In this document: in pieces, positions 10,331 through 41,030 of the stretch
How the letters are laid out: the number at the start of each line of letters is the position of its first letter
How positions within the stretch are numbered: position 1 is the first letter of the stretch
IMG/VR virus record: IMGVR_UViG_3300047548_001236
Span: 124,001-188,000 of that record
Strand: one strand, 5' to 3'
Length of the DNA: 64,000 nt
Translations under genes and position numbers: made by a program
The notes under the pieces: generated by a model
Told to the model about the DNA's origin: nothing
Databases searched by the model: none
The model's input: only the letters and a program-made list of their open reading frames with translations

Positions 10331-10333
10331 ACT

Positions 10334-13300
10334 ATGCCAAAACAGATAAAGTTAGGATTCGACAAGGGAGCGACCAGATCCATTGAAACAGATCAGGTTC
10401 TCGTGGATATTCGCGGGAACCTGCTAAGAGACGATGCTGGTAATTTCCTGTACACGAAGACCAATGTTCAGCTTCCTGGATTCTTGTATGCTAGGAAAGC
10501 CACGTCGATCGTTGTCAACAACAAGGGTGGCGTGACAGTTTCTCCTGGCGGTTCAATCTCTGTTGAAGAACAGTTCCCAGAGATTTCGCAGGTGTCCACA
10601 TCGCTACTTGGTATTCCTCGTAAAAACGTGCAGCAGTCTCTTCTTGCTGATGTTTCTGTATACGGCATCGACACTAATACATGGGAATTCTATCGCAATC
10701 CCGTTCCATACAATCCACCGGAATGGACAACCAGATTCAATAGTGTATATGGAAACAGGTATTACCCTAGGATAGCCGAAAAACCCGATCAACAAGCTCT
10801 TGCAATTGAAGCTTTTCCGGTTCCTTGGACCTTCCCCTTTGGACCTTTGTTTGGTGATCAAGGAAACAGATATAACCCAACTATCTTCCCCTTCTACGTT
10901 AACTTTATCCAGATGGGTAACGACCTTTACCAATATTACATGGGGTTGGGTCTCACTGACTTCGCGCAGCGGTATTTCCTTCCACGAGCGATTGACGGCG
11001 GTGCAAACGTCCTTGTAGGTCCACCCGACGATGTCGAATATAACGAATCTTTCGAAGTCTCAATGGCAAATATCGAAAGATGGACGCTAACGTGGATGGA
11101 TATCAGAGATGGGAAGCTTCGGGATCCTCGCAACATCGACGAAGGTCTACGTGTTCTTACATTCTCGCGTATACAGGCTAACCTAGGTGTCAACTATGAT
11201 CAGTCGAATACAAGACCAGGAATCCAGTCCTCAGTCTACACATACGCACAACTACAAAGTAGAGAGGCGTTTAGATATCAACCTGGTGCGATAAGTGGAT
11301 TTACGTTTGGTGTCAAGATCCAGTTTGATGAAACAAGTTTGAACAACAAGATTGAATGGGGCTGTGCTAACGACACAGACCAATATATGTTCCAGGTTGC
11401 TGGTTCACAGTTTAACATTGTCAGAAGAAGTACTGTACCGTTTACTGCAGAGGCCCAGGTTGAAAACAACATACCCGTTTCTCCTCAGACGCCAACACTG
11501 TCGCCTAATCCTTTTGAACGTCCTGGATCGGAACAACTTGGTGGACCATCTAATCCTGTAAACCAACTACCTCGTTATGAAACAGTGATTCGACAAGATC
11601 AGTTCAACGGCGATAGTCTCGACGGATCAGGTCCATCGGGATACACTATATCGTTTGAAGAAGTGACAATGTACAAGATTGAGTACTCCTGGTATGGGGC
11701 CATTGGTGCTAAATTCTATGCATACATTCCTGTTGGACACGGTGAATGCCGTTGGGTGCTATTGCATACGTTGATCATTGAAAACACGCTGCCTTATCCA
11801 TCGCTTAGAAATCCGTATATGCATTTCCGTTACACGATGGTAATACAAGACACAAGTGGTCTTCGAGCTCCGATATACATCTACAAATATGGTGCATCGT
11901 ATTACATCGACGGTGCAGATGAGGGTTCATATGTGTACAACACATTCGGCGTTGAATCCAAACCTGTTTCATCTACCCAAAGCGTTCCTATCATTGGCTT
12001 CCAAACAAAAGACGCAATTTTGAACAGCGAGGGTGTTGCAACTCCAAACCAGAAAAACGTATACGTAGAAAAAATCACAGCATCATCTAACAGAAACGTT
12101 AGAGTGGACTTCGTCGAGTGTGAGGGATGTCAAGGTGGTTTTGGACATTTTTACAGTACGAGCCTGGTGAACGGTAGTTCAGCTCAACCTGCTGAATTCC
12201 GTCTGAGGGATGGTTCGACGATTGAATATGCCAACAACGAGATTATGTTCACAGAAGCAGATGTCGGGAAGAAGGTAATAGCACCGGGTATTTTTAGCAC
12301 CTATATATTCCCTAACGATCCTGAGGATATGTCTAAAGCTGCTATTAAGAGACGTGTAGGCGTTTCAACTGACAATAACGAACCGATTACACAAAATTAT
12401 GCAGTAACAGCAACAGCAATTGTTAACGGTCAGACAATTGGTCTATACAACACTTCCGAAGACGGTTTAGTGTTCACAGGTAAGTTGTATGGGTTCGATG
12501 ACGTCGCAGCTTGCGTAACTCCTTTCACAAAAGCAAACATCGATTTCCGATTCCTGAATCCCGTATCAAGAGAAACGACTTCGCACTTCCGTGAATTTCG
12601 TATTGGCGTGACTTCTAAACAGCCTTCGCTTGATGTAGAAGGTAACCTCGTCTTCGATGATGCGCCTCTTGATCAATCGTCTGAATTGTTCCTCGAATTT
12701 TCACAACTCCAAGCGTCGAAAAACCCTGCTGGAGCGGAAATTGGAGAGCACGAAACACGTGTTGGTTATGTTATGGAAGATGATTACCGTCTTCCACGAC
12801 CAAAAGGAGCAAACTCAGGCGAGTGCTCAACTGTATCAATTACTGTATCAAACAATGAAGTTCCTGCTTCATACAGTGCTATCAATCCTTCAAACGGAGC
12901 GCCTGGTAATTTCATCATATTTACACAAGGCGACCCAGGTATATCTGTTCTGGGAGGAGAGATTGGTGTGCTTGATGTAAATGGCAACATTTACTCTGCA
13001 GCAAAGTACAACAACGTGAATGTAGTGTTTACCTCCAACCCTATAACATACTCAGACCCCGAGGGCGTTGTCACTGTATATGCAGAAATTTCCGATCCAA
13101 TCACAAGCATACCACAGTCGAAGATATCGTTTAAAATTGTCAGTATGAAAGCACGACACGTTCAAAAGAGCGTCGTGCGTGAGTTTGACGTGTTCCCATT
13201 GTACGTATTCGTATCAATGCACGATAATGCTCGTATCAACAACATTGTGATAAAAGAGTATGACGTCAACAGTTCCTTATCATACTCACCCACGTGGTTG

Positions 13301-19975: not shown

Positions 19976-22854
19976 TGGCATCAACAATCAGAATTAAAAG
20001 GTCGGGAAGTACAGTTTCGCCAACGACTCTCGCGTCGGGCGAACTTGCATACTCCTGGGCAGCAGGAGCCGGGGGTAAACTATACCTAGGTACTGGAAGT
20101 GAAATCATTGCAGGTCAGGCACCTAACATCGATGTCATCGGTGGTAAGTTCTTCACTGACATGCTGGACCATACGGCTGGTACGCTAACAGCAAGCTCGG
20201 CAATTATTGTCGATGCAAATAGCAAAATTAATCAGCTGTTCGTCGATAACATCTCTGTCGACGGTAACACAATCACGACAACAGACCTGAACGGTAACTT
20301 GGTATTCAATACCAACGGAACGGGTGTATTTGACTTCTCGGGAAAGAGACTGACAAATCTCGCCGCTCCAGTTAATAGTGGTGACGCCGTCACACTAGGA
20401 TATCTGACGACTTCCTTTTCTAGCGCTCTCAACATAACGGGCGATACTGGCTCTGATTCAATATCGCTATTGTCTGAAACGCTAGACTTTAACGGTGGTA
20501 CAGGAATCTCTACTGCTGTCACGGCAAACACGGTAACGTTCAATCTGACCAATACCGGTGTAGCGGCTGGATCGTATGGATCTGCGACAGCAATTCCAAC
20601 ATTCACCGTCAACGCTCAAGGCCGTCTGACTGCAGCCGCTAACGTCAGCATTGCTATTCCTTCGACGCAGATCACTGATTTCACTGAGGCAGTGCAAGAC
20701 GTTGCTGGCGGAATGGTTAGCGGATCTACCCAAAATGGTATTTCTGTCACCTACGACGACAACACCGGTAAACTGAACTTTGACGTTAATGATCCAGTAA
20801 TTACGCTGTCGGGTGACGTTGCTGGTTCTGCGACAATGACCAATCTTGGTAACGTTACTATCACGACAACAATCCAAGCCAACTCCGTTGCTCTGGGTGT
20901 CGATACAACTGGTAACTATGTTGCCAGCCTGACGCAAGGGACAGGAGTATTCATCACAGGTGGTACTGGCGAAGGTTCTACTCCAACGATTGCAATTGGG
21001 CAAGACGTATCACCAACCGCAAACGTCGTGTTTGCTGGTGTTAACGTAACTGGTTCAATGTTGATTGACGGAAACCTGACTGTTTCAGGTAACACGTTCG
21101 TTGTCTCAACACAAACACTCGCTGTCCAAGACAACTTGATTTATTTGAACGAGGCGTCCACTGAAACTATCATCAACGCTGTAGGTGATGGGGATGATGT
21201 CGTTTATACCGTTTCAGGTGTCAATACGTTCAAAACTGGACAAAGTGTCACTGTCACGGGCGTTTCACCTTCGCAATATAACGTCAACAATGCTATCATC
21301 GCATTTTCTAACACCACAGCTTTCTCGGTTGCAAGTACAGCGACGGGAACATACGTGTCTGGTGGTACTGCATTCGCAAGAACAGCAGCAAACCCTGATC
21401 TTGGTTTTGTAGGTGGTTACGATGATGGAACCTACGCACATGCCGGTTTCTTTAGAGATGCGACCGACAACCGTTTCAAGGTGTTCACTGGTTATACTCT
21501 CGAACCAGAAGTTTTCATTGATACAGCAGATCCGTCGTTCAAACTTGCAGATATGCAAGCAAACACGTTCTACGGCGCTCTGTCTGGTAATGCATCTAGC
21601 GCATCGAAGCTGGAAACAGCTAGAACCATTTCACTCGGAGGAGATCTCAGCGGATCGACCTCGTTTGACGGTTCGACCAACGTTACGATCACAGCGTCCA
21701 TAAACGCCAACACGATCACCAACGCTGACATTGCTTCCAACGCTGCGATTGCGATCACGAAGCTGGCCGCTTCAACGATTTCGGGAATCTCCCTTGGCAA
21801 CAACCTGAACTCTGTAACGTTTAACAACAGCGGAACGGGAGCTGCTTCCGGTTCTACGTATAACGGTAGCACAGCCGTAACAATTTCACACAACACCATT
21901 GGCGCATCGCCTTTGGCAGGTTCGTCTTCGATAACAACAGTCGGTACGATCACTTCTGGTACATGGAACGGTTCGATTATCAGTCCGACGTATGGTGGCA
22001 CTGGTGTAAACAACGGTTCCAACACTCTTACCATCAACACTGCAAACGTCGCATTTACTGCTGCGGCTGGTGGCTCCTCATTAACACTGCCTGCAACTGG
22101 CACACTTGCTACGCTTGAAGGTAACGAAACGTTTACCGGGCAGAAGGCATTCAGCAGCGCCATAACCATGTCGACCACGACAGGAACCTTGTCGCTTGGT
22201 ACAAGCCAAACGACCGGCGTGTTCACCATGGGTGGCGTTTCTCAGACAGGTACGATCACGCTTGGACGTTCCACGGTTACTCAGACTGTTGACATCGCAG
22301 TTGGTGCAACGTCTACGGGCAACACCAAGACTGTCAACATCGGTACAAATGGAACTGCTGGATCCACGACCAACATCAACATCGGTTCGACCGCTGGCGG
22401 TACGACCGCAATCAGCAGCCCAACACTGACTGCAAACAACATTACTGCATCTGGAACCATAACAGGGACTCTTAGTGGCAACGCTACAACAGCATCTCGT
22501 CTGCAAACTGCACGTACGATTGCTCTGGCCGGAGATGTTGCAGGTTCTGTGTCGTTTGATGGATCGGCCAACGTTTCGATCACAACAACGATTCAGCCAA
22601 ACTCAGTTGCTCTGGGCACAGATACCACAGGCGACTATGTAGCGTTTGTTGCCAACACAGCTGGTTCGGGTGTTCTGGTTACAGGAACGGCTGGTGAAGG
22701 TGCAACCTTCACTGTATCTGGTATCAACGCAACGTTGACTGTCAAGGGTGTGGCATCGTTTGGCGGTTATGCTGACGACGCAAATACAGTGCGACAGTTC
22801 GCTGTGACAGGCGGAGACGTTTCGATAATTAACCTTGACGGCGGTTCGTTCTAA
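19975..22854 (+). CDS. Long tail fibre-like protein
   Basis: N-terminal IRIKRS...LASGELAYS. T/G/S/N-rich, with internal repeats (ITLSGDVAGS, ISLGGDLSGS, IALAGDVAGS). Ends DGGSF. Confidence 0.75.
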   Translation: MASTIRIKRSGSTVSPTTLASGELAYSWAAGAGGKLYLGTGSEIIAGQAPNIDVIGGKFFTDMLDHTAGTLTASSAIIVDANSKINQLFVDNISVDGNTITTTDLNGNLVFNTNGTGVFDFSGKRLTNLAAPVNSGDAVTLGYLTTSFSSALNITGDTGSDSISLLSETLDFNGGTGISTAVTANTVTFNLTNTGVAAGSYGSATAIPTFTVNAQGRLTAAANVSIAIPSTQITDFTEAVQDVAGGMVSGSTQNGISVTYDDNTGKLNFDVNDPVITLSGDVAGSATMTNLGNVTITTTIQANSVALGVDTTGNYVASLTQGTGVFITGGTGEGSTPTIAIGQDVSPTANVVFAGVNVTGSMLIDGNLTVSGNTFVVSTQTLAVQDNLIYLNEASTETIINAVGDGDDVVYTVSGVNTFKTGQSVTVTGVSPSQYNVNNAIIAFSNTTAFSVASTATGTYVSGGTAFARTAANPDLGFVGGYDDGTYAHAGFFRDATDNRFKVFTGYTLEPEVFIDTADPSFKLADMQANTFYGALSGNASSASKLETARTISLGGDLSGSTSFDGSTNVTITASINANTITNADIASNAAIAITKLAASTISGISLGNNLNSVTFNNSGTGAASGSTYNGSTAVTISHNTIGASPLAGSSSITTVGTITSGTWNGSIISPTYGGTGVNNGSNTLTINTANVAFTAAAGGSSLTLPATGTLATLEGNETFTGQKAFSSAITMSTTTGTLSLGTSQTTGVFTMGGVSQTGTITLGRSTVTQTVDIAVGATSTGNTKTVNIGTNGTAGSTTNINIGSTAGGTTAISSPTLTANNITASGTITGTLSGNATTASRLQTARTIALAGDVAGSVSFDGSANVSITTTIQPNSVALGTDTTGDYVAFVANTAGSGVLVTGTAGEGATFTVSGINATLTVKGVASFGGYADDANTVRQFAVTGGDVSIINLDGGSF

Positions 22855-23239: not shown

Positions 23240-24511
23240 ATGACGGATACACTTATCAAACTGCGTAGAAGCGCAGTTCCTGGAAAAATACCATCAGATG
23301 CACAACTGCAGCTGGGTGAGGTCGCCATCAACACATATGATGGTAAGATGTTCTTCAAGCAATCGTCGACGTCGAACACAATCCTCCAAGTCGCAACAAC
23401 GTCTCTAAATTTAAGCGATTTTGCAAGCACCACCTCTGCACAGCTTGCTAGTATCATCAGCGATGAGATCGGTACTGGATCTCTCGTTTTTTCAAATGCA
23501 CCCACGCTAGTAACACCTGTCATTAACGGTAACACAACATTCGACAGTGGAACGCTGTTTATTGATTCGGTCAATAATAGAGTCGGTGTTGGAACTATAT
23601 CTCCCACACAACAATTTGAAGCGACTACCGGTAAATTTTCCAACGTCATCCTTGGTACAGACAGCGCTGATGCAAGCAAACGGTTGTCGATATTTTATGA
23701 TCCTGGTGTTCCCGGTGCAGTAATAGACGCTCCCAGCAACAGATTATTGATTCGTACGTTCGGTTCTGAAAGAATGAGAGTCGAGCAGACCGGATTCGTT
23801 GGAATAGGTAACACGGCACCGTCTGAAAGACTTCATGTTGACGGTAATATCAGACTTTCGGGAGCTGTTGTTGATTATGTCGGTTCTAAAGGAACGCTAG
23901 GACAGGTCCTCACATCTGACGGTTCAAAATCATACTGGGCTGACCCAACTGGCGGTGGTAGCGGTGGTATTGCTACAGCTTCACAATCAATTGTTCGCGA
24001 TATATTTACTGGCAACTCTGCTGCTTCGAGCTACACTCTTTCTACTACACCAATAGCAGAACGTTTTGTTATAGTTACCATAAACGGTATTGTTCAGCAA
24101 GATGCTGCATATAGTGTTGCAGGGACTTCGCTTGTTTTCGATGAGCCGCTTGCAAACACAGACGTGGTCGAGGCAAGAACGTTTGTTCCATACAACCCAT
24201 TTATGACGGATGCGTCTGCGACATTTGCCAACACATCGCCTAGTCAAGTTTTAGATACCTTTGACTCAACTTTGTATAGAACAGCTAAGTACCTGGTACA
24301 AATCGCCAACACGTCTTCCTATCAAGCGGCTGAGGTGTTGTTGATTCACGATGGTTCACAGGTATTCATTACTGAATATGCTCAACTGGCAACAGGAACG
24401 TCTCTTGGTGTAATCGACGCCGACATATCAGGTGGAAATGTCAGACTGCTTGTCAACCCATCATTTCCAAACGTCACGGCAAAATCAATCCGTTATAGCA
24501 TAGGTGTATGA
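23240..24511 (+). CDS. Tail fibre-like protein
   Basis: IKLRRSAVPGKIP...GEVAINTYDGK N-terminus, VGIGNTAPSERLHV repeats, and a YRTAKYLVQ...EVLLIHDG C-terminal domain. Confidence 0.75.
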   Translation: MTDTLIKLRRSAVPGKIPSDAQLQLGEVAINTYDGKMFFKQSSTSNTILQVATTSLNLSDFASTTSAQLASIISDEIGTGSLVFSNAPTLVTPVINGNTTFDSGTLFIDSVNNRVGVGTISPTQQFEATTGKFSNVILGTDSADASKRLSIFYDPGVPGAVIDAPSNRLLIRTFGSERMRVEQTGFVGIGNTAPSERLHVDGNIRLSGAVVDYVGSKGTLGQVLTSDGSKSYWADPTGGGSGGIATASQSIVRDIFTGNSAASSYTLSTTPIAERFVIVTINGIVQQDAAYSVAGTSLVFDEPLANTDVVEARTFVPYNPFMTDASATFANTSPSQVLDTFDSTLYRTAKYLVQIANTSSYQAAEVLLIHDGSQVFITEYAQLATGTSLGVIDADISGGNVRLLVNPSFPNVTAKSIRYSIGV

Positions 24512-24512
24512 C

Positions 24513-25484
24513 ATGACTACAAAAGTTAAACTAAGCAACTTGTCTCAAGAAGTGCTCGCAGGAGTTGGAGGTGGATCTGGCGGAAACGGAACATCTTCTG
24601 TAGACTTCCATAATATCGGCGGTGGCGTTGAAGTTACACACCGCTACATCGGAGCATATGACGCTTGTTTTTGGGATGCTACAGACGGGCTTTATAAAAG
24701 CGGGTTAAACTTAGATAATGCTACTAGTTTATTCAATACTGCTGAAGATCGACTAGCAAGCGTAAGTGGTATTTACCCTATTGTTGGCTTAACAAGAAAC
24801 GAAGCAAGGTTGATGGCAGCAAATAACGGGACAGGATGGAGACAGTTAGATTTTACACTAGCATCTGCCATTCAGCTACTTTATCTCGTAGAGTATCAAA
24901 CATTCTTTAGTCAAAATGTGTTAGGAGCAGGTAACACTAATGGAAGTTATATAGCAAGCAGTAGCAACCAAACAGACAGTCCACACACTATAGCAGGCGC
25001 TGGAAATGTGTTGGGTAACAGCAGTACCAATATTACAACAGGCGCAGGTGTAAATGCTAAACCTGGTACAAGTTTTATGAAGTATCGTGGAATCGAGAAC
25101 TTTTACGGTAATTGTTGGAATTGGGTTGACGGTCTAAACATTAATATAGGGACAGCCGGTACAGCATTCTATACCAACAATAGAGCAGATTTTATTGATG
25201 ACGTTTCAACAAATATGATTCTGTTAGCAAACAATATTGCAACCTCTTCTGGATTTATTCGCAATATTAATACAGGCAATCTGGGATTCTTACCGACTGA
25301 CACTGTGGGTGCGTCAAGTACAACTTATATAACTGATCAAGCATTTTTGACAACTTCATTAAACCGTGTCGCCCATCTCGGTGGTCTTGCGAATTCTGGT
25401 GTGGATGCTGGGGTTTTCTGCTGGGATCTGTCTAATGATTCGTCGCTTCGGCTTCGGTGTTTCGGTGCACGCGCCTGCTTCTAA
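24513..25484 (+). CDS. DGR target protein 1 (C-type lectin/FGE-like adhesin domain, Mtd-like)
   Basis: GIENFYGNCWNWVDG motif and a C-terminal VR (LGG...AGVF.W.L....R.R.FGARACF). Start at 24513 preferred because of the AGGTG RBS. Confidence 0.9.
   Translation: MTTKVKLSNLSQEVLAGVGGGSGGNGTSSVDFHNIGGGVEVTHRYIGAYDACFWDATDGLYKSGLNLDNATSLFNTAEDRLASVSGIYPIVGLTRNEARLMAANNGTGWRQLDFTLASAIQLLYLVEYQTFFSQNVLGAGNTNGSYIASSSNQTDSPHTIAGAGNVLGNSSTNITTGAGVNAKPGTSFMKYRGIENFYGNCWNWVDGLNINIGTAGTAFYTNNRADFIDDVSTNMILLANNIATSSGFIRNINTGNLGFLPTDTVGASSTTYITDQAFLTTSLNRVAHLGGLANSGVDAGVFCWDLSNDSSLRLRCFGARACF
25369..25475 (+). repeat. Variable repeat VR1
   Basis: Aligns ungapped to 27111-27217 over 107 bp with 19 mismatches, 18 of them at TR adenines (the exception is GTC to GTT). 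Confidence 0.95.
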
Positions 25485-25533
25485 ACAGATGCAGACAACG
25501 ATCTGAAAGATCGTTGTCCGTGTATAGAAGCAG
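25475..25533 (+). other. IMH region plus nested hairpin after VR1
   Basis: Inner stem GACAACGATCT-GAA-AGATCGTTGTC (25494-25518). Outer stem CTGCTTCTA (25475-25483) pairs with TAGAAGCAG (25525-25533). Confidence 0.85.
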
Positions 25534-25552
25534 ATAAATAAAAGGAAAACAA

Positions 25553-25804
25553 ATGAAAAGCTACAGTCTACATCAACAACCAACATACAGCCCAAGTGGC
25601 AAGGAACTTAGGATTAATTTCAACCATCAATTAGTTGAAACAAGTAATGAATGGGAAGAAACATCGAGTATGCGGGTTTGTGATCAGATTCTGTTGTCTG
25701 TTACTGCTACTAGAGAACAGATTATAGACGCAATCAACCTAATCGATCCATCACAAGCCGAAACATTAGCAGACGGTTGGTTTAGACAAGAGGAAAAATT
25801 ATGA
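25553..25804 (+). CDS. Small protein between the DGR targets, homologous to 28374-28610
   Basis: GATAAATA (25533-25540) and AAGGA RBS upstream. LRINFNHQLVE resembles IRVHWNHEQVE. Confidence 0.75.
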   Translation: MKSYSLHQQPTYSPSGKELRINFNHQLVETSNEWEETSSMRVCDQILLSVTATREQIIDAINLIDPSQAETLADGWFRQEEKL

Positions 25805-26991
25805 ATGTAAGAATAGGCCCAGAAAATCGAACCCTTCTTAATCTAGGTTGGAATCAAGTAAACGATACCTATACACCAACAACAACTAGAAATACAGTGA
25901 GTGCAGTTCATCTCAGAATGCGCCGTTGTTTGCTCAATTTGAATGGTACAGTCAACTACTATCTTGATCCAAATGATAGTACCAAGAAAGCTGACGGGAC
26001 ACCTTCTGTTCTCACGGGTGCTGATGGATATGTGATGGTGGAAATACCCAAGTTTTCATTCAAATACACATACGCCGCAGGGCAGTATTTCTGGGAAGTA
26101 GTGATCGGTAAACGAGATGGCTACACACTTCACCCGGCATTCATAAAGGATGGGGTTGAAGTAGAGAACCGTTATATCGGTGCCTATGATGCCTGCGTAT
26201 GGGATGCGACTACCGATACATATATCAGCGGTCTAAACTTAGATAACTCAGATACATTGATTGACATTGCTGTTGATAGATTGGCAAGTGTATCCGGTGT
26301 TTATCCAATGGTTGGTCAGACTCGAGCAAGATTTAGATCACTTGCTGATAACAATGGTACGGGTTGGAGGCAGTTAGATTTTTGGCTAGCGAGCGCTGTT
26401 CAGCTCCTCTATCTGATTGAGTATGATACTTTTAAAAGCCAGCAAGTGTTAGGATTGGGTAATGTCAGTTCATCATATTTGACGTCTAGCAGCAATCAGT
26501 CGGATAGCCCTCACACTATCGCTGGTGCATCAAATGCGTTAGGTAATCGATCTACCAACGGAACGCAACCAAGCGCTGGTGCAAGACCTGGGATTGCTTA
26601 TATGAGTTATCGTGGAATCGAGAACTTTTACGGTAATTGTTGGAATTGGGTTGACGGGTTTAACCTGATTAATTTTGTAGCTTGGGTCACTAACAATAGA
26701 ACAAACTTTGTCGATGATGTAACAACAAATATGACTAATATCGGTACACTCGCAAGCACATCTGGATTTGCAACAGATATTGTCAATTATGGTGGTACAT
26801 TTTTACCGAGTACCGTGGGTGGGTCATCTACTACACGATTGACAGACCAACTATTTGTATCTTCTGGTAACCGTGTCGCCCGTCTCGGTGGTAGTGCGAA
26901 TCTTGGTGTGGATGCTGGGGTCTTCTGCTGGGCTCTGAATGATGATTCGTCGTATCGGAATCGGCCGATCGGTGCGCGCGCCTGCTTCTAA
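25801..26991 (+). CDS. DGR target protein 2 (C-type lectin/FGE-like adhesin domain)
   Basis: VMVEIPKF, LHPAF, YIGAYDA and GIENFYGNCWNWVDG motifs, with a C-terminal VR. Confidence 0.9.
   Translation: MNVRIGPENRTLLNLGWNQVNDTYTPTTTRNTVSAVHLRMRRCLLNLNGTVNYYLDPNDSTKKADGTPSVLTGADGYVMVEIPKFSFKYTYAAGQYFWEVVIGKRDGYTLHPAFIKDGVEVENRYIGAYDACVWDATTDTYISGLNLDNSDTLIDIAVDRLASVSGVYPMVGQTRARFRSLADNNGTGWRQLDFWLASAVQLLYLIEYDTFKSQQVLGLGNVSSSYLTSSSNQSDSPHTIAGASNALGNRSTNGTQPSAGARPGIAYMSYRGIENFYGNCWNWVDGFNLINFVAWVTNNRTNFVDDVTTNMTNIGTLASTSGFATDIVNYGGTFLPSTVGGSSTTRLTDQLFVSSGNRVARLGGSANLGVDAGVFCWALNDDSSYRNRPIGARACF
26876..26982 (+). repeat. Variable repeat VR2
   Basis: Aligns ungapped to the TR over 107 bp with 16 mismatches, 15 at TR adenines (the exception is the T of AAT to CCG). 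Confidence 0.95.
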
Positions 26992-27040
26992 ACAGATGCA
27001 GTCAACGATCTGAAAGATCGTTGTCCGTGTATAGAAGCAG
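26982..27040 (+). other. IMH region plus nested hairpin after VR2
   Basis: Same element as after VR1 with a single substitution. Inner stem CAACGATCT-GAA-AGATCGTTG (27003-27023). Confidence 0.85.
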
Positions 27041-27048
27041 TATAAATA
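27041..27048 (+). promoter_or_regulatory. T4-type late promoter upstream of TR/RT
   Basis: Exact TATAAATA in the intergenic gap. Confidence 0.8.
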
Positions 27049-27073
27049 AAACATGTGAAAGGAGAATACACTA

Positions 27074-27331
27074 ATGATTAGAATAGGGGTGCAGTATCAA
27101 TGCCCAGTATTCACCCATCTCGGTGGTAATGCGAATAATGGTGTGAATGCTGGGGTCTTCTACTGGAATCTGAATAATGATTCGTCGAATCGGAATCGGA
27201 ATATCGGTGCACACGCCAATCCCCAAAGCAATGCTGTAAAGATACTGACTCCTCACCTCTTGGTGAAATCTGTCGCCACAAAAAGTTTGGTAGGGAAACC
27301 GAAGAACTTGGCTGGGGGATGCAGGAAATGA
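27074..27331 (+). CDS. TR-containing ORF (85 aa), possibly translated and coupled to the RT
   Basis: AAGGAG RBS about 9 nt upstream. The TR is in frame. Its TGA (27329-27331) overlaps the RT ATG (27328-27330). Confidence 0.5.
   Translation: MIRIGVQYQCPVFTHLGGNANNGVNAGVFYWNLNNDSSNRNRNIGAHANPQSNAVKILTPHLLVKSVATKSLVGKPKNLAGGCRK
27111..27217 (+). repeat. DGR template repeat (TR)
   Basis: Contains 27 adenines, including 10 in-frame AAT codons. It is the adenine-retaining copy of VR1 and VR2, and diverges after ...CACGCC (IMH*). Confidence 0.95.
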
Positions 27332-28377
27332 AACGATACGGGAATCTATTTGAAAAAATCTGCGACTTAGATAATCTTCTACTTGCACATCAGAACGCTA
27401 GATTAGGAAAATCTAGCTATAAAGAAGTTCAAATGGTAGACAAAAATCCACGTTATTATGCTGAAAAACTAAGACATCTTTTACAATCTAAGACGTTTAC
27501 AACAAGTAAGTATCAAATATTCTGGAAAGATTGTGGAACTAAACAGAGATACATCTACAAGTTACCTTACTGGCCAGATAGAATAGTTCAACATGCTCTG
27601 ATGCAAATTGTAGAACCGATATTCACAAGGACTTTAATCCGTGATACTTTCCAGTCGATAAAAGAGAGAGGTACACACGATTGTAGAAAACGGCTTCAAA
27701 AAGCAATAGAAAATATCAAAGAAGACTCATATGTTTTAAACTTTGACATTAAGCAGTTTTACCCATCTGTCGACAATCAACTACTAAAAGTGTTAGTGAG
27801 ACGTAAAATCAAATGTAAAGATACACTTTGGTTGCTTGATGATATTATTGACTCAACAAAAGGTCTCCCTGTAGGAAACTACAGTAGCCAGATTTTAGGT
27901 AATTTATACTTATCTGCTATGGATCACTATGCAAAAGAAACTCTAGGAATCAAACACTATTTTAGATATTGCGATGATATAGTTATTCTCGCTGACACAA
28001 AAGAGCAATGTAATTTATATAAGAAAAAACTATTTAATATAGTCGATCGGTTAAAGTTAACTGTGAAAAGCAACTGGCAGGTTTTCCCGTTTTCAACAAG
28101 AGCGGTAGATTTTATTGGTTGGGTATTTTCGAAAAGCCGGGTGCGGCTTAGAAAGAGAACTGCGCGTAGATTCACAAATAAAGTTATGATGATAAAGAAG
28201 AATCACAGGCGAATATCACCGGCTCATGCTGTATGCTCTATTATGTCCTACTGGGGTCAGTTTAAACACATTAATTCAAAAAGACTCTGGAAACAGCACA
28301 TAGATAAAGAATTTATGAATAAGACAGATAAATTTTTCGATAAACAAAATCTATTTAGAGAGGTGATCTGCAAATGA
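27328..28377 (+). CDS. DGR reverse transcriptase
   Basis: MKRYGNLFEKI start, DRIVQHAL, FDIKQFYPSVD, the DGR-type GLPVGNYSSQ motif, catalytic RYCDD and DFIGW. No maturase or endonuclease domain. Confidence 0.95.
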   Translation: MKRYGNLFEKICDLDNLLLAHQNARLGKSSYKEVQMVDKNPRYYAEKLRHLLQSKTFTTSKYQIFWKDCGTKQRYIYKLPYWPDRIVQHALMQIVEPIFTRTLIRDTFQSIKERGTHDCRKRLQKAIENIKEDSYVLNFDIKQFYPSVDNQLLKVLVRRKIKCKDTLWLLDDIIDSTKGLPVGNYSSQILGNLYLSAMDHYAKETLGIKHYFRYCDDIVILADTKEQCNLYKKKLFNIVDRLKLTVKSNWQVFPFSTRAVDFIGWVFSKSRVRLRKRTARRFTNKVMMIKKNHRRISPAHAVCSIMSYWGQFKHINSKRLWKQHIDKEFMNKTDKFFDKQNLFREVICK

Positions 28378-28610
28378 TTAAAGTTCATTCAGACAACAAG
28401 CTAGAAACATTTCAAATACTAGGACCAATCATCCGAGTTCATTGGAACCACGAACAAGTTGAACAAGAAGAAATGGATAATGGTAAAAGAGTGACTTGGA
28501 TTGCCGATGAGATAGTTGTACCGTCAGATATCTCTACAGAAGAGTTGATAAAAACACTCGAGCAATACAATGCTCCTGTGAATGAAATAATGCAAGAGTG
28601 GAATAAATAA
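28374..28610 (+). CDS. Small protein coupled to the RT, homologous to 25553-25804
   Basis: ATGA overlap with the RT stop. IRVHWNHEQVE...ADEIVV...STEELIKTL...W pattern. Confidence 0.75.
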   Translation: MIKVHSDNKLETFQILGPIIRVHWNHEQVEQEEMDNGKRVTWIADEIVVPSDISTEELIKTLEQYNAPVNEIMQEWNK

Positions 28611-28639
28611 ACAAAAGGCGCCATTAGGGAGAGTGATCT

Positions 28640-31600
28640 ATGGCAAACGATAAAAGATTTGTAGCCAAGAATGGTCTAACTACTCAAAATATTTTGTTTG
28701 TAGATAATATCCAGTCTGCAAATAACACCGTTTTGATAGAAATGAAACCAACGAACGAGTTAGTCGTCGCTACAGATGAGCAAGCACTGGTTGTGTCAAA
28801 TACACCAGGTTCTATCCTCACAGTCAACGATTCTACTGGCATACCTACTATTCAGGTAACCGATTACGGTAATATTCTTGTTGGTGATCTTGTAGATAAC
28901 GGTGTAGATAAAATCCAAGCTAGTGGGAGTTTGTTTTCTGAAACCATAAAAACTTCCAAACTATCATTCAAGACTCAGCAAGGTTCAGATGTAATATCAT
29001 CTGAACTAACTAGTAACACTGAAGTTACGTTTATTGGTGATAGCAACGATATACTGTCAATGGGATTAGACCCTAATAGTTCACTTTTTACAGTCAACGA
29101 TATTTCTGGTGTGCCTTCGATTGAAGTTGTTGACGATGGTACTGTAAGATTAGCAGAAATTATCGGGAATGTCGGCGTTGGATTAGCGTCGCCGTCAGAA
29201 AAATTGCATGTGCAAGGAAATGTAAGAGCAACGTCGTTGATGGCTGCTAACGGTTCTGCTGCTTCCCCAGCCTTTGATTTTGCTGCTGACCCTAACACTG
29301 GTATGTTTTCTGCTGGAGCTGATACGATTGGGTTCTCTACGAACGGCACGATAGCGGCAGCTATTACATCGACAGGTAACCTGCGTCTGTTCAACACTGC
29401 CGGAACCTTCTACACGGAAATCTCCAACCAACCGACAGCTAATAACACTCTGACACTACCGGCCACAGGCAACGTGACCCTTGTGTCGGGAACGATGGTT
29501 CCAACTACTGGTACTGGCGCGACTGGAACGTGGGGTATCTCAGTAACTGGTAATGCGGCAACTGCAACCACATTACAAACCTCAAGAAATATCAATGGTA
29601 CACTTTTCAACGGTTCTGCTGATATTACGATACCGCGTGTAAGAGCAGCTGACGATCGTACTGTCGCACCGTCGGATTTCTTAACAGCGTATACTACTTT
29701 TGGATTTGGTTCATGGAATAACAATAATACCTCCCCCTATAGCGATTATTTAGTACTTCGCAACTATACAGACTCTACTGGCGGAAATGATAATATGCTA
29801 TCGTTCCGTAAAGATACGTTAGGCATAAGACTGTGGCAAGCACCATATGGCAATAACTCACCTTTCTCAACTTTTAAAGATGTAGCTTGGACAGACGGTA
29901 CTAATGCAACAGGCACTTGGAACATTAGCGTTTCTACGGCAAACAATGCTACCAATCTCAACGGGCAATCAGCTTCATATTATCTTGATTGGACCAATGT
30001 AACCAATAAGCCAGATCCTGTAATAACCCTGGCGGGCGATCTTACTGGTTCTGTTACTTTGACTGATTTAGGATCAGGCACACTCACTGCAACAATTGCC
30101 GCTAATTCAGTTGCTCTTGGCGCAGATACTACAGGTAATTATGTTGCTTCCCTTATACAGGGAACTGGTGTAACTATTACAAATAATACGGGTGAATCAG
30201 CTACACCGACGATTGCTATTGGACAAGACGTAAGTATATCTGCAAATGTCCAATTTGCAAATATGATTGTTTCTGGTGATCTAACAGTTAACGGTACGAC
30301 TACAACAATCAACACCACAAATCTTACCACAAAAGATACACTGATTGAACTTAACAGTGGAGCAAATACTAGTATCAATGATTCTGGTATTCTAATCAAT
30401 CGAGGATCCACTGGGGCTAATGCTTTTATTGGTTGGAATGAAACAACAGATAAATTTGTTGTAGGTACGACAACCGCAACTGGGAATACAACAGGTAACC
30501 TAGCTGTAACAGCTGGAACCTTAGTAGCTGCGTCATTTGAAGGTTCTTTGAGTGGTAATGCAACCACCTCAACTACCGCCAATAATATCGCTGGTGGAGT
30601 CGCTGGAGGGGTCCCTTATCAAAGTGGAGTTGGAACAACCGCTATAACAGCCGCAGGTACTGCCGGCCAGGTTTTTGTTTCTGCGGGTTCAAGTGCCCCA
30701 TCATGGCAGACGTTGACTCTTGAGAATATTCCTGATGCGTGGGTTAAACGTAGTGTCAAAGCAGCCACGACTGCAAATATTACTTTATCGGGTGCACAAA
30801 CTATCGACGGTGTTTCGGTAGTCGCAGGGGATAGAGTTCTTGTAAAGAACCAAACTGCTGCCGCTGAAAATGGTATCTATGTCGTAGCAGCGGGTGCTTG
30901 GACAAGAGCAGCTGATGCTAATATTTCATCAGAATTAGCAGCAGCAACTGTAGGTATTGACCAAGGTACTACAAACGGCGGTAAAACTTATGATACCGAT
31001 TTTAAGGGCACTGATACTCTTGGTACAACTGCAATGTCTTGGTACAGAGTATTAGATGCTGCTTCTATAGGTTCCGAAGTTCAAGCATATGATGCCGGTC
31101 TGCAATCCATTGCAGGTCTAACCACCGCGGCAGATCGTATGATATATACAACTGCAGCAGATACATATGCTGTTACTACATTAACAGCTGCTGGTAGAGC
31201 AATTCTAGACGATGCTGATGCTGCAGCCCAGCGCACTACACTTGGACTTGGAACGGCCAATAACGTCACCTTTGCAACTGTAACAGCTACAACATCTTTG
31301 ACTTCTCCATTACTGACTAATGCTGGTACTCTATCACTTTCAGCTACTGGTTCAAACGTCATTGCTGCATCAACAAATGGTTCAGAACGTTTACGTATTA
31401 CAGACACCGGTAGAGTAGGTATTGGCACTACAATTCCTACAACATCACTTCATGTAACTGCGACTCCCCCAGCAAGCATCCCTACTGCTGGGGCTGCTTC
31501 TTCACACGTAGCCATCGGAACAAATTCTTATGGGACGTCGATTGGTACCCTATCAAGCGGCAGAGGTTATATCCAGCAACAAAGATTTGATGGTAATACG

Positions 31601-31999
31601 GCTGTTTATGATCTTTTGCTCAATCCGAACGGCGGTAACGTAGGTATTGGCACAACAAATCCTTCGACAATTCTTCACGCAAATGGCGAAATAACTGCTA
31701 CGGACTTTAATACAACATCAGACCTAAATGTCAAAGAAAATATTGAAATTATACCAGATGCTGTTGTAAAAGTTTCTCAAATAAATGGTGTGACATTTAA
31801 TTTTAAAGCCGATAATACCAAGCAGAGACACGCAGGTGTTATTGCACAGGATGTAGAAAAGGTACTTCCTGAAGCCGTTAAAGAAATGTCGGATGGAATT
31901 AAACACGTTGCTTACGGAAACTTGATAGGTCTGCTTGTAGAAGCCATAAAAGATCAACAAAAACAAATAGATGAGCTAAAAGCTCTTATCAATAAATAA
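28640..31999 (+). CDS. Long tail fibre with C-terminal S74-like chaperone
   Basis: MANDKRFVAKNGL N-terminus, a TITLSGAQTIDGV...GDRVLVKNQ module, and C-terminal SDLNVKENI...GVIAQDVE...VAYGNL. Confidence 0.85.
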   Translation: MANDKRFVAKNGLTTQNILFVDNIQSANNTVLIEMKPTNELVVATDEQALVVSNTPGSILTVNDSTGIPTIQVTDYGNILVGDLVDNGVDKIQASGSLFSETIKTSKLSFKTQQGSDVISSELTSNTEVTFIGDSNDILSMGLDPNSSLFTVNDISGVPSIEVVDDGTVRLAEIIGNVGVGLASPSEKLHVQGNVRATSLMAANGSAASPAFDFAADPNTGMFSAGADTIGFSTNGTIAAAITSTGNLRLFNTAGTFYTEISNQPTANNTLTLPATGNVTLVSGTMVPTTGTGATGTWGISVTGNAATATTLQTSRNINGTLFNGSADITIPRVRAADDRTVAPSDFLTAYTTFGFGSWNNNNTSPYSDYLVLRNYTDSTGGNDNMLSFRKDTLGIRLWQAPYGNNSPFSTFKDVAWTDGTNATGTWNISVSTANNATNLNGQSASYYLDWTNVTNKPDPVITLAGDLTGSVTLTDLGSGTLTATIAANSVALGADTTGNYVASLIQGTGVTITNNTGESATPTIAIGQDVSISANVQFANMIVSGDLTVNGTTTTINTTNLTTKDTLIELNSGANTSINDSGILINRGSTGANAFIGWNETTDKFVVGTTTATGNTTGNLAVTAGTLVAASFEGSLSGNATTSTTANNIAGGVAGGVPYQSGVGTTAITAAGTAGQVFVSAGSSAPSWQTLTLENIPDAWVKRSVKAATTANITLSGAQTIDGVSVVAGDRVLVKNQTAAAENGIYVVAAGAWTRAADANISSELAAATVGIDQGTTNGGKTYDTDFKGTDTLGTTAMSWYRVLDAASIGSEVQAYDAGLQSIAGLTTAADRMIYTTAADTYAVTTLTAAGRAILDDADAAAQRTTLGLGTANNVTFATVTATTSLTSPLLTNAGTLSLSATGSNVIAASTNGSERLRITDTGRVGIGTTIPTTSLHVTATPPASIPTAGAASSHVAIGTNSYGTSIGTLSSGRGYIQQQRFDGNTAVYDLLLNPNGGNVGIGTTNPSTILHANGEITATDFNTTSDLNVKENIEIIPDAVVKVSQINGVTFNFKADNTKQRHAGVIAQDVEKVLPEAVKEMSDGIKHVAYGNLIGLLVEAIKDQQKQIDELKALINK

Positions 32000-39059: not shown

Positions 39060-39493
39060 ATGAAAAGAAAATAGCAGAGGTATTGGGACTGAGACCTCTT
39101 GATGAAGTGCCTCAAGAAGAAGCCAGTGTTCCCACTGTGGTTGAAATAATTGACGCCCCGCCCACTCCACTGGCCACGGCCCAGGAAGAGGTGATTGATG
39201 ATATTGAACTGGCGAAGCAGAACATATCAGAGCTGATGACTAAAGGGGTTGAATCGCTGGATGAACTCATGGCTGTTGCCAAGCAATCCCAGAATCCTCG
39301 TGCGTATGAAGTTGTATCAACTTTGATGAAAACTCTAATTGATGCCAATAAAGAATTTGTGGGCATGTCTGAGAAGAAGAAATATGCGAAAGAGGACCAT
39401 CCGGCAGGTCAGGCCACAACTAATGTGACAAATAACAACTTGATTCTGTCCACGACAGACATGTTGAAAATGATAAAGGGAGATATGGAGTGA
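39056..39493 (+). CDS. 16: Terminase small subunit gp16
   Basis: AKQSQNPRAYEVVSTLMK and TNNNLILSTTDML motifs. Position. Confidence 0.85.
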   Translation: MNEKKIAEVLGLRPLDEVPQEEASVPTVVEIIDAPPTPLATAQEEVIDDIELAKQNISELMTKGVESLDELMAVAKQSQNPRAYEVVSTLMKTLIDANKEFVGMSEKKKYAKEDHPAGQATTNVTNNNLILSTTDMLKMIKGDME

Positions 39494-40098
39494 ATTACAG
39501 TATAGAGCAGATAGCTGAAGTGATGAAGTGCAGTGAAGACGTCGAATACTTTGCCGACAACTACATCAAATTCTCAAACCCCAACGGCGTTGTCCTGGCC
39601 AAATTGAATGATTTTCAACGCAGTGTGATCAGTAATTATAGAGACAACAAGGTCTTTTTCATGCCTGCAGGGCGGCAAGAAGGCAAGTCGACTGTTGCTG
39701 CTATTATACTACTACACCAAGCTCTTTTCACAGAGCAGAGAGTCAGTCTAGTCTTTGCACGCACCAAGTCTCAGAGCAGTTCAATTATTGAGATCGTCAC
39801 CGAAATGTATGAACGTCTGCCCGAGTTTTTCTCAATGTGTTCCAAAATGACCGCCCGCAGCAAGTCAAAGGTGGAATTTGGCAACGGGTGCTCCATCATC
39901 AGTGCAGGGTCAGACATTAATTACGGTAGAGGTAGAGCCATCTCGACCATCTATATTGACGAGTCAGAATGGTTTGATAAACTCGAGGATGTGTTGACCT
40001 CGTTATATCCTTGTATGGCCGCAATACCCTATTCTAAACTGTTTGCCCTATCGTCAACGTTTACAGGTGATTCATTTAGAAGACTGAGGGTGACCTAA
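39490..40098 (+). CDS. Stand-alone paralogue of the terminase ATPase domain
   Basis: GRQEGKST (Walker A), TIYIDE (Walker B) and LSST. Colinear with the N-half of gp17 and has no nuclease domain. Confidence 0.7.
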   Translation: MNYSIEQIAEVMKCSEDVEYFADNYIKFSNPNGVVLAKLNDFQRSVISNYRDNKVFFMPAGRQEGKSTVAAIILLHQALFTEQRVSLVFARTKSQSSSIIEIVTEMYERLPEFFSMCSKMTARSKSKVEFGNGCSIISAGSDINYGRGRAISTIYIDESEWFDKLEDVLTSLYPCMAAIPYSKLFALSSTFTGDSFRRLRVT

Positions 40099-40979: not shown

Positions 40980-40991
40980 ATTCCTTGGATT

Positions 40992-41029
40992 TATAAATAC
41001 CTCCGCTAGTATATACCGAGGAGGGGTAT
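40992..41029 (+). promoter_or_regulatory. Late promoter and RBS-sequestering hairpin of the endonuclease gene
   Basis: TATAAATA at 40992-40999. ATACCTC (40997-41003) can pair with the GAGGGGTAT RBS region (41021-41029). Confidence 0.6.
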
Positions 41030-41030
41030 C

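What the first reader, a model, noticed from the sequence alone, without database searches (positions are those of the whole stretch)
24513..28610. Complete diversity-generating retroelement in a T4-like myovirus tail-fibre block
Seen directly: a DGR-type RT (GLPVGNYSSQ, RYCDD), a 107-bp TR with 27 adenines, and two VRs whose mismatches are at TR adenines in 18/19 and 15/16 cases. Ten in-frame AAT codons can each give 15 amino acids, and no adenine substitution in this TR can create a stop. Established: this is the BPP-1 tropism-switching architecture, and described DGR phages are mostly temperate or persistent. T4-like phages are classically strictly lytic, so mutagenic retrohoming would have to fit within one lytic cycle. 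Lifestyle cannot be proven from this window.
Basis: partly seen in the sequence, partly recalled or inferred. Interest (0 to 1): 0.95.

Follow-up and report, generated by a model that had tools for sequence, protein, structure and literature searches.

The report
Retroelement diversifying T4-like phage tail proteins
A T4-like (normally strictly lytic) giant phage carries a genuine diversity-generating retroelement that rewrites the tips of two tail proteins. It lacks the usual Avd helper gene, and related cassettes sit in at least four other T4-like phage contigs and one T5-like contig, so it is a real but not unique case of a known mechanism in an unexpected carrier.

Summary
The TR is 27111-27217 (107 bp, 27 A). 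VR1 is 25369-25475, with 18 of 19 mismatches at TR adenines. VR2 is 26876-26982, with 15 of 16. There are ten in-frame AAT codons and no possible stop.

- **Reverse transcriptase:** its best solved relative is the BPP-1 DGR enzyme (E 2e-33, against 5e-13 for group II and 3e-10 for retron enzymes).
- **Targets:** both are paralogous proteins whose model matches the DGR variable protein TaqVP (Foldseek E 9e-12).
- **Host phage:** the contig is T4-like on both sides of the cassette (gp13 to gp23 synteny, capsid protein 66% identical to phiM12-group phages, enriched TATAAATA late-promoter motif).

- No Avd gene is present, so this is the known Avd-less TR-RT architecture, not the BPP-1 one.
- A conserved small acidic protein of unknown fold follows the RT, and a paralogue follows target 1.
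- The case is not a singleton. Related DGRs lie in four other T4-like contigs at three genome positions.
- A cassette 88-92% identical in DNA sits in a T5-like contig. Its TR differs at two non-adenine sites, and its VRs carry the same two changes, which is a footprint of retrohoming.

Ongoing hypervariation and lifestyle remain untested. This is a new member of a known kind, of moderate interest.

The parts
23240..24511 (+). Upstream fibre-like gene (423 aa, DUF4183; tail-fibre-type N-terminus). Its end overlaps the target-1 ORF by 8 nt.
   Evidence: Its C-terminus is 42-47% identical to the gene that precedes the target in L003/L004.
24513..25484 (+). DGR target gene 1 (ORF open from GTG 24504; likely start ATG 24513). 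It is a paralogue of target 2.
   Evidence: 63% identity over 290 aa to target 2; phrog_5302 'tail protein' E 5.5e-50; start context.
25369..25475 (+). VR1, the last 107 bp but 9 of target 1.
   Evidence: 19 mismatches to TR, 18 at TR adenines.
25476..25532 (+). Stem-loop just after VR1 (inner 11-bp stem 25494-25518, outer 8-bp stem). It follows the GC-rich IMH-like VR end.
   Evidence: DNA fold -17.1 kcal/mol, z -7.0, 0 of 200 shuffles as good. No equivalent follows the TR.
25553..25804 (+). Small acidic protein (83 aa, pI 4.7), a paralogue of the 78-aa protein that follows the RT.
25801..26991 (+). DGR target gene 2 (396 aa), a C-type-lectin-fold variable protein of the TaqVP type.
   Evidence: Family profile hits PDB 5vf4 at E 0.009. 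AF2 model (pLDDT 76.7, pTM 0.82) matches 5vf4 in Foldseek at E 9e-12, with Mtd next. phrog_5302 E 3.9e-84.
26876..26982 (+). VR2.
   Evidence: 16 mismatches to TR, 15 at TR adenines.
26983..27039 (+). Stem-loop just after VR2.
   Evidence: z -6.25, 0 of 200 shuffles as good. In L008 a stem of different sequence lies at the same place.
27041..27048 (+). TATAAATA, a match to the T4 late-promoter consensus, 62 nt upstream of the TR.
   Evidence: 11 copies in the window against 1.75 expected, 0 of 100 shuffles reach 11. Seven others lie 18-56 nt upstream of gene starts: gp13, gp18, the 502-aa gene, gp21, gp22 and two homing-endonuclease genes. Function is inferred.
27074..27331 (+). 85-codon ORF running through the TR in the VR reading frame. 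Probably not a gene.
   Evidence: Its only similarity is to target C-termini. It is not kept open in relatives, e.g. 25 codons in L090. Post-TR substitutions between window and L008 are non-conservative while the DNA is highly conserved.
27111..27217 (+). Template repeat (TR).
   Evidence: It differs at only 2 of 107 positions from the TR of L003-L007.
27253..27321 (+). Conserved structured RNA between TR and RT (the spacer part of the DGR RNA), distantly like Rfam RT-17.
   Evidence: 18 pairs, 7 with compensatory changes, 97.5% of cells paired against 22-53% when slid. RT-17 scores 22.4 bits here, below threshold. At the same position in L120, L133 and L095 it scores 43-47 bits, above threshold.
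27328..28377 (+). DGR reverse transcriptase (349 aa; an alternative ATG lies at 27319).
   Evidence: PDB best hit is BPP-1 bRT 8ub7 at E 1.9e-33; phrog_1423 E 7e-99; below cut-off for group II, retron and Drt models.
28374..28610 (+). Small acidic protein (78 aa, pI 4.65). Its start overlaps the RT stop. It is a candidate accessory factor or target partner.
   Evidence: Homologues lie directly after the RT in about 25 further loci. AF2 pLDDT 94, four strands plus two helices. No Pfam, PDB or PHROG annotation. BFVD matches are all uncharacterised phage proteins.
25038..29149 (+). Segment shared at 88-92% DNA identity with contigs L003-L007 (T5-like context). It runs from the middle of target 1 to about codon 170 of the downstream fibre gene.
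28640..31999 (+). Downstream tail-fibre gene (1119 aa) with a C-terminal Peptidase_S74 intramolecular chaperone.
   Evidence: Its first 194 aa are 84.5% identical to a 218-aa protein of L003.

Best explanation
This is a genuine, probably functional diversity-generating retroelement resident in the tail-fibre region of a T4-like myovirus. The contig is IMGVR_UViG_3300047548_001236, 283 kb. Shown: a bRT-like reverse transcriptase, a 107-bp template repeat, and two variable repeats at the 3' ends of two paralogous C-type-lectin-fold (TaqVP/Mtd-like) tail proteins. Each VR is followed by a GC-rich boundary and a strong stem-loop. A conserved structured RNA lies between TR and RT. Inferred mechanism: the TR-spacer-RT unit is transcribed, plausibly late in infection from the TATAAATA element at 27041. 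The RT copies the TR RNA into cDNA and misincorporates opposite adenines. The cDNA then replaces VR1 or VR2, recoding up to 16 codons per target (about 2.4e15 possible peptides) in a presumed receptor-binding surface, so that the progeny of a lytic burst can include altered host specificities. It works without Avd, as in the known Avd-less TR-RT architecture. A conserved small acidic protein after the RT, with a paralogue after target 1, may be an accessory factor or a partner or chaperone of the targets. The cassette is mobile between virulent phage lineages.
For: TR/VR statistics. RT affinity to BPP-1 bRT, with the motif-4 GxxxSQ and YxDD signatures. The RT falls below the curated cut-offs of group II, retron and Drt models. 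Target fold. Hairpins after both VRs but not after the TR. A hairpin of different sequence lies at the same place in L008. Spacer RNA covariation. Retrohoming footprint: the TR of L003-L007 differs from the window TR at two non-adenine positions, and the VRs of those loci carry the same two changes. All their remaining TR/VR differences are at adenines (20 of 20, 20 of 20, 17 of 17). T4-like identity on both sides of the cassette: gp13-14-15-16-17-18-19-20-21-22-23 order; capsid protein 66% identical to the phiM12 group, Melnitz, HTVC008M and cyanomyoviruses; upstream VrlC-like gene with its best hits in the same phages; TATAAATA enrichment. Independent T4-like contigs with related DGRs and adenine-specific TR/VR pairs: L008/L009 and L255 (next to gp21-gp23), L257 (upstream of gp13-gp17), L173 (between gp7 and gp8).
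Against: No read-level or population evidence of current hypervariation. The VRs of L003, L004 and L005, from different samples, are identical. Two target-2 variants in one 90% cluster differ outside the VR, not inside it. No Avd is present, and BPP-1 requires it. Four TR adenines (27113, 27146, 27162, 27213) are G in all four distinct VR sequences seen (window VR1 and VR2, L004 VR1 and VR2). Many cDNA products would therefore be selected against, or those sites are not being rewritten. The RT segment has lower G+C (34-39%) than its flanks (42-48%), as expected for an import. That the targets bind receptors is inferred from position and fold, not shown. Only 64 kb of the 283-kb contig was examined for lysogeny genes.
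Confidence: 0.8

Rival explanations
1. Assembly chimera: the cassette belongs to another phage (for example the T5-like lineage of L003) and was stitched into a T4-like contig.
For: A cassette 88-92% identical in DNA exists in a non-T4-like context. The RT region has lower G+C than its flanks.
Against: The window cassette is a distinct allele (8-12% divergent), so an assembler would not merge the two. Homology ends inside two ORFs (at 25038 and 29149), and both stay in frame. The two flanks have their best matches in the same T4-like lineage. Four other T4-like contigs carry related DGRs between T4 core genes.
Confidence: 0.04
2. Relic DGR: the cassette was active in the past but no longer diversifies. 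The VRs are now ordinary, slowly evolving sequence.
For: VRs are identical in three contigs from different samples and in two cluster members. There is one non-adenine mismatch in each window VR. No Avd is present.
Against: The RT ORF is intact with its catalytic motifs. The TR is nearly invariant (2 of 107 differences) while the surrounding cassette DNA is 8-12% diverged. TR changes have been copied into the VRs since the two lineages split. The spacer RNA and the VR hairpins are conserved with compensatory changes.
Confidence: 0.15
3. The diversified proteins are not receptor-binding tail proteins. They could instead be surface decorations or factors binding some other variable ligand.
For: Neither window target matches any Pfam or NCBIfam model. 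In L008 and L255 the cassette lies beside capsid genes rather than fibre genes.
Against: The targets lie between fibre genes. They match phrog_5302 'tail protein'. Three of 36 family members carry the Mtd N-terminal domain. The homologue in Yersinia phage fEV-1 is annotated as a tail fibre. The fold is that of DGR variable proteins, including Mtd.
Confidence: 0.12

Closest known systems
Bordetella phage BPP-1 DGR (mtd-avd-TR-brt)
   Same: The RT is the closest solved relative (8ub7, E 1.9e-33). Shared features are adenine-specific TR-to-VR differences, a VR at the 3' end of a C-type-lectin-fold tail protein, a GC-rich boundary followed by a stem-loop after the VR, and a structured spacer RNA between TR and RT.
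   Different: There is no avd gene. There are two targets instead of one. The target fold is nearer TaqVP than Mtd. The carrier is a T4-like, presumably virulent, 283-kb phage rather than a 42-kb temperate podovirus.
Avd-less DGRs, 'Architecture A' (TR-RT core) of Wu et al. 2018 (PMC5758913)
   Same: The core is target-TR-RT with no avd, HRDC or MSL gene. That paper reports 29% of 372 DGRs with this layout and an RT lineage that lacks avd.
   Different: A conserved 78-110-aa acidic protein follows the RT in this clade. Whether it relates to that paper's acidic CH1 accessory (160-169 aa, pI 4.7) was not tested.
DGRs of crAss-like phages, Yersinia phage fEV-1 and Psychrobacillus phage Perkons
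   Same: These are the best GenBank phage matches for both the RT (38-44%) and the target (25-42%). Perkons also has no annotated gene between target and RT.
   Different: None is T4-like. Perkons is temperate. RT identity is below 45%.
TaqVP (PDB 5vf4), the Thermus aquaticus DGR variable protein
   Same: It is the best structural match of the target-2 model (Foldseek E 9e-12, probability 1.00). The family profile hits it weakly (E 0.009), with the GN.WEWV and C-terminal GAR..F stretches aligned.
   Different: Identity is 17-18%. TaqVP is a bacterial protein, not a phage tail component.
Rfam RT-17 RNA (RF03020)
   Same: Same position (just upstream of the RT start) and same two-helix layout. 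Relatives L120, L133 and L095 score above the gathering threshold.
   Different: The window scores only 22.4 bits against a threshold of 40.4. The T4-like relatives L255, L257 and L173 gave no hit at E <= 1.

Membership tests
Diversity-generating retroelement (DGR) | RT of the DGR lineage, with motif-4 [LIV]GxxxSQ and YxDD | tested here: met
   Best PDB hit is BPP-1 bRT at E 1.9e-33, against 5e-13 for group II and 3e-10 for retron. GLPVGNYSSQ and RYCDD are aligned. The RT is below the curated cut-offs of group II, retron and Drt models.
Diversity-generating retroelement (DGR) | TR/VR repeat pair whose differences fall at TR adenines | tested here: met
   18 of 19 and 15 of 16 mismatches; P 7e-13 and 3e-10.
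Diversity-generating retroelement (DGR) | VR at the C-terminus of a target protein with a variation-tolerant fold (C-type lectin or Ig) | tested here: met
   Both VRs end 9 nt before the stop codon. The model matches TaqVP, then Mtd.
Diversity-generating retroelement (DGR) | 3' boundary element (IMH in the VR, IMH* in the TR) and a downstream stem-loop | tested here: met
   The VR end GC(A/G)CGCGCC contrasts with the TR end GCACACGCC, and homology stops there. Stem-loops with z -7.0 and -6.25 follow the VRs only. This rests on sequence alone; function is untested.
Diversity-generating retroelement (DGR) | Mutagenic retrohoming actually occurs | not testable with these tools
   Indirect only. 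Two non-adenine TR substitutions in the L003 lineage are mirrored in its VRs. No read data were available.
BPP-1-type DGR (Architecture B: avd-TR-RT) | Avd accessory gene (about 110-130 aa, basic, four-helix bundle) | tested here: not met
   No Pfam, NCBIfam or PHROG Avd match for any cassette ORF. Only 120 bp separate the target-2 stop from the TR. The two small proteins are acidic (pI 4.65 and 4.69). The modelled 78-aa protein is beta-rich. The rest of the 283-kb contig was not searched.
T4-like myoviruses (T4 superfamily; far-T4/phiM12/cyanophage-like branch) | gp23-type major capsid protein and the T4 core structural genes in T4 order | tested here: met
   The capsid protein is 66% identical to phiM12/phiN3 and 63-66% to Melnitz, HTVC008M and cyanomyoviruses. 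The order gp13, 14, 15, 16, 17, 18, 19, 20, 21, 22, 23 is kept.
T4-like myoviruses (T4 superfamily; far-T4/phiM12/cyanophage-like branch) | T4-type late promoters (TATAAATA) upstream of late genes | tested here: met
   11 copies against 1.75 expected, placed 18-56 nt upstream of gp13, gp18, gp21, gp22 and others. This is motif evidence only.
T4-like myoviruses (T4 superfamily; far-T4/phiM12/cyanophage-like branch) | Strictly lytic lifestyle (no integrase or repressor) | tested here: inconclusive
   No integrase or repressor was found among the window ORFs scanned. However, 219 kb of the contig lie outside the window.

The most novel reading that the evidence does not exclude
The window is one representative of an undescribed lineage of Avd-less DGRs associated with T4-like phages. 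On this reading the lineage runs entirely within a lytic cycle and is transcribed from a T4-type late promoter. It uses the conserved small acidic alpha/beta protein in place of Avd, or as a dedicated partner of the variable protein. It also moves as a roughly 4-kb cassette between unrelated virulent phages (T4-like and T5-like) that share a host.
Probability: 0.3. Interest if true: 0.75.

Novelty: new member of a known kind. Interest (0 to 1): 0.55.

Why it matters
DGR biology has been worked out in a temperate phage and in bacterial chromosomes. Here the same machinery sits in T4-like phages, which are the best-understood virulent phages and are abundant in aquatic and soil viromes.

It recurs in at least five T4-like contigs, at three genome positions, from two RT lineages. 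That suggests targeted hypermutation of tail proteins is a regular host-range strategy of some environmental T4-like phages.

It also offers a tractable setting for three questions:
- How does retrohoming proceed within a single lytic cycle?
- Does it use the phage's own recombination-dependent replication?
- How does it work without Avd?

The near-identical cassette in a T5-like contig shows that DGRs can be exchanged between unrelated virulent phages. I found no paper linking DGRs to T4-like phages in the searchable library. Large DGR catalogues may nonetheless already contain such contigs without comment.

Tried and rejected
- **Avd:** searched by Pfam, PHROGs and NCBIfam on every cassette ORF, and by structure prediction of the 78-aa protein. 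None was found.
- **The 85-codon ORF over the TR as a basic mini-accessory protein (pI 10.5):** rejected. It is not kept open in relatives, and its post-TR substitutions are non-conservative although the DNA is highly conserved.
- **The small acidic protein:** no Pfam, PDB-sequence, PDB-fold or annotated PHROG match. BFVD gave only uncharacterised phage proteins.
- **Rfam RT-17:** sub-threshold in the window and absent at E <= 1 in three T4-like relatives. The RNA claim therefore rests on my own alignment.
- **IMG/VR:** no relative above 50% RT identity other than the window's own contig.
- **GTDB genomes:** best RT relative 53%, and no host clue.
- **Population variation from cluster members:** the VRs were identical, so there is no evidence either way on current activity.
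- **NCBIfam:** has no DGR-RT model, so it excludes other RT families only through their cut-offs.
- **L255:** my automatic TR/VR finder returned nothing for this locus, and I did not follow it up.
- **The rest of the 283-kb contig:** not fetched, so the integrase and repressor scan covers the window only.
Full report
**1. The observation**

A direct-repeat search finds three copies of one element, at about 25362, 26869 and 27104. In register, the template copy is 27111-27217 (107 bp: 27 A, 22 C, 29 G, 29 T).
- VR1 (25369-25475) differs from it at 19 positions, 18 of them TR adenines.
- VR2 (26876-26982) differs at 16 positions, 15 of them TR adenines.
- The hypergeometric P values are 7e-13 and 3e-10.

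Both VRs are in frame and end 9 nt before the stop codon of their ORFs. The TR frame holds ten AAT codons (15 amino acids each) and six further codons with one adenine at a coding position (4 amino acids each). No adenine substitution creates a stop, and the product is about 2.4e15 peptides. There is no third VR in the window.

**2. The enzyme**

ORF 27319/27328-28377 carries RVT_1.
- Against all PDB sequences its best match is the BPP-1 DGR reverse transcriptase (8ub7, E 1.9e-33). Group II intron RTs reach 5e-13, retron-type RTs 3e-10 and Drt2 2e-7.
- The alignment puts GLPVGNYSSQ on GIPIGSLTSQ and RYCDD on RYMDD.
- It falls far below the curated cut-offs of the NCBIfam group II, retron and Drt models.
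- All close relatives are 346-349 aa and start at the equivalent of ATG 27328.

**3. The targets**

The two target proteins are paralogues, 63% identical over 290 aa.
- They belong to a very large family: more than 2,400 hits, typically 55-60% identical over the full length.
- The window proteins match no Pfam model, but 3 of 36 sampled family members carry the Mtd N-terminal domain.
- A family profile hits PDB 5vf4 (E 0.009), with the GN.WEWV and C-terminal GAR..F motifs aligned. 5VF4 is TaqVP, a DGR variable protein.
- An AlphaFold model of target 2 (pLDDT 76.7, pTM 0.82) matches TaqVP in Foldseek at E 9e-12 and probability 1.00. The Mtd variants, FGE-type enzymes and TvpA follow weakly.
- PHROGs calls both targets 'tail protein'. 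The homologue in Yersinia phage fEV-1 is annotated as a tail fibre.

**4. Cis elements**

- *VR boundary.* Homology between VR and TR stops at a GC-rich end. The VRs read GC(A/G)CGCGCC followed by TGCTTC. The TR reads GCACACGCC followed by AATCCC.
- *Stem-loop.* Each VR is followed by a strong stem-loop (z -7.0 and -6.25, with none of 200 shuffles as good). The sequence after the TR is unremarkable (z -1.25). In L008 a stem of different sequence occupies the same place.
- *Spacer RNA.* The 110 nt between TR and RT are more conserved than the RT gene itself. They fold into four helices (window 27253-27321) with 18 pairs, 7 of which show compensatory changes. 97.5% of cells are paired, against 22-53% when the partners are slid.
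- *Rfam.* The element resembles Rfam RT-17. The window scores 22.4 bits, below the 40.4 threshold, while three relatives score 43-47 bits at the same position. Three other T4-like relatives gave no hit.
- *The ORF over the TR.* The 85-codon ORF through the TR is probably a by-product of the TR keeping the VR reading frame.

**5. What is missing, and what is extra**

There is no Avd. Only 120 bp separate the target-2 stop from the TR, and no cassette ORF matches Avd in any library. This corresponds to the known Avd-less TR-RT architecture. Wu et al. 2018 report it for 29% of 372 DGRs, with one RT lineage lacking avd entirely.

Instead, a 78-aa acidic protein (pI 4.65) overlaps the RT stop. An 83-aa paralogue (pI 4.69) follows target 1.
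- Homologues, typically 100-110 aa, lie directly after the RT in about 25 further loci whose RTs are only 43-68% identical.
- The model is confident (pLDDT 94): four strands and two helices, not a helical bundle.
- It has no PDB match. Its only structural relatives are uncharacterised phage proteins, including one from the DGR-bearing crAss-like phage cr50_1.
- One copy follows each target, with TR-RT inserted before the second copy. I therefore favour a partner or chaperone of the variable protein, or a new accessory factor. This is inference.

**6. The carrier**

The window is part of IMGVR_UViG_3300047548_001236, 282,855 bp.
- Downstream of the cassette lie gp13, gp14, gp15, gp16, gp17, gp18, gp19, gp20, gp21, gp22 and gp23 in T4 order.
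- The capsid protein is 66% identical to those of the Sinorhizobium phiM12 group, and 63-66% to Melnitz, HTVC008M and cyanomyoviruses.
- Upstream, the VrlC-like gene at 120-1859 has its best hits in the same phages.
- TATAAATA, the T4 late-promoter consensus (my knowledge), occurs 11 times against 1.75 expected. It lies 18-56 nt upstream of gp13, gp18, gp21, gp22 and others. One copy lies at 27041, 62 nt before the TR.
- No integrase or repressor was seen among the window ORFs scanned. The other 219 kb were not examined.

**7. Relatives, chimerism and activity**

*A near-identical cassette in a T5-like contig.* An RT 95% identical (P0001) lies on five contigs, L003-L007. Their DNA matches window 25038-29149 at 88-92%. 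The 39-kb contig L003 is not T4-like. It has a T5-type small terminase whose nearest relatives are T5-like Vibrio phages, a siphovirus tail terminator and an L-shaped-fibre assembly protein.

*Why this is not a chimera.*
- The window cassette is a distinct allele.
- Both homology borders fall inside ORFs that remain open.
- Both flanks belong to one T4-like lineage.

A chimera is therefore very unlikely. The pattern indicates recent exchange of a cassette between two virulent phage types by recombination within fibre genes.

*A footprint of retrohoming.* The TR of L003-L007 differs from the window TR at two non-adenine positions, and their VRs carry exactly those two changes. All other TR/VR differences there are at adenines (20 of 20, 20 of 20, 17 of 17). 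That is the expected trace of TR-to-VR transfer after the lineages split.

*A caution on current activity.* VRs are identical among contigs from different samples, so nothing shows rapid present-day turnover.

**8. Not a singleton**

Related DGRs with adenine-specific repeats sit between T4 core genes in other contigs.

| Locus | RT identity to window | Position of the DGR | Adenine mismatches |
|---|---|---|---|
| L008/L009 | 68% | next to gp21-gp23 | 20 of 20 |
| L255 | 57% | between the gp20 region and gp21 | not recovered by my finder |
| L257 | 51% | upstream of gp13-gp17 | 22 of 23 |
| L173 | 52% | between gp7 and gp8 | 20 of 22 |

- In an RT tree the window and L003 are sisters (100/100). 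They sit inside a 25-row clade (97/92) that also holds L008, L255 and L257. L173 lies in another clade, so there were at least two acquisitions.
- In GenBank phages, 172 records have an RT match. None of the 90 listed is T4-like or longer than 137 kb.
- In GTDB genomes the best RT relative is 53% identical.
- I found no paper linking DGRs to T4-like phages. DGRs on apparently lytic phages are, however, already reported.

**9. Verdict**

This is a real DGR of the Avd-less architecture in a T4-like phage. The mechanism is known, the carrier lineage is unexpected, and there is an uncharacterised conserved small protein. It is a new member of a known kind, of moderate interest.

Noticed in passing
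window 39490-42879: The large terminase (gp17) is in three ORFs. 39490-40098 and 40098-40979 both match the same N-terminal ATPase part of the TerL profile. 41731-42879 is the C-terminal part. A homing-endonuclease-like ORF (41031-41750) with its own TATAAATA lies in between.
   Followed up: no
window 52124-53509 and 56908-57762: There are further homing-endonuclease-like genes. An HNH type lies directly after gp23 and has a homologue at the same place in L008. Another phrog_314 type lies at 56908 with TATAAATA upstream.
   Followed up: no
window 27113, 27146, 27162, 27213 (TR adenines): These four TR adenines are G in all four distinct VR sequences seen (window VR1 and VR2, L004 VR1 and VR2). 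They give Ala, Asp, Cys and Arg instead of Thr, Asn, Tyr and His. This suggests strong selection on part of the 'variable' surface, or sites that are not rewritten.
   Followed up: partly
L003 9219-9725 compared with L004 602-2624: L003 and L005 have a single 232-aa target directly before the TR. L004 and the window have two targets with the small gene between them. The single-target form looks like a deletion by recombination between the two VR regions.
   Followed up: partly
window 22580-22643 and 30084-30147: A 64-bp stretch is 75% identical between the 959-aa and the 1119-aa fibre genes. This is a possible recombination substrate for fibre shuffling.
   Followed up: no
L171 (ENA BUCK21-1 scaffold_1, 292.5 kb), locus 8208-11373: Another very large contig carries a DGR (TR/VR 22 of 22 mismatches at adenines, RT 50% identical, a 107-aa small protein after the RT) among large structural genes. 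Its phage type was not determined.
   Followed up: partly
L039-L041 (IMG/VR), RT at about 350-1330: A DGR RT (49% identical) lies directly upstream of a portal, protease and capsid module only 25-37% identical to the window's. This is a more distant gp20/21/23-type phage that also carries a DGR next to its head genes.
   Followed up: no
window 55527-55955, 57763-58449, 59877-60320 (minus strand): YqeY-like, calcineurin-like phosphoesterase and peptidyl-tRNA hydrolase PTH2-like genes lie downstream of the head module.
   Followed up: no
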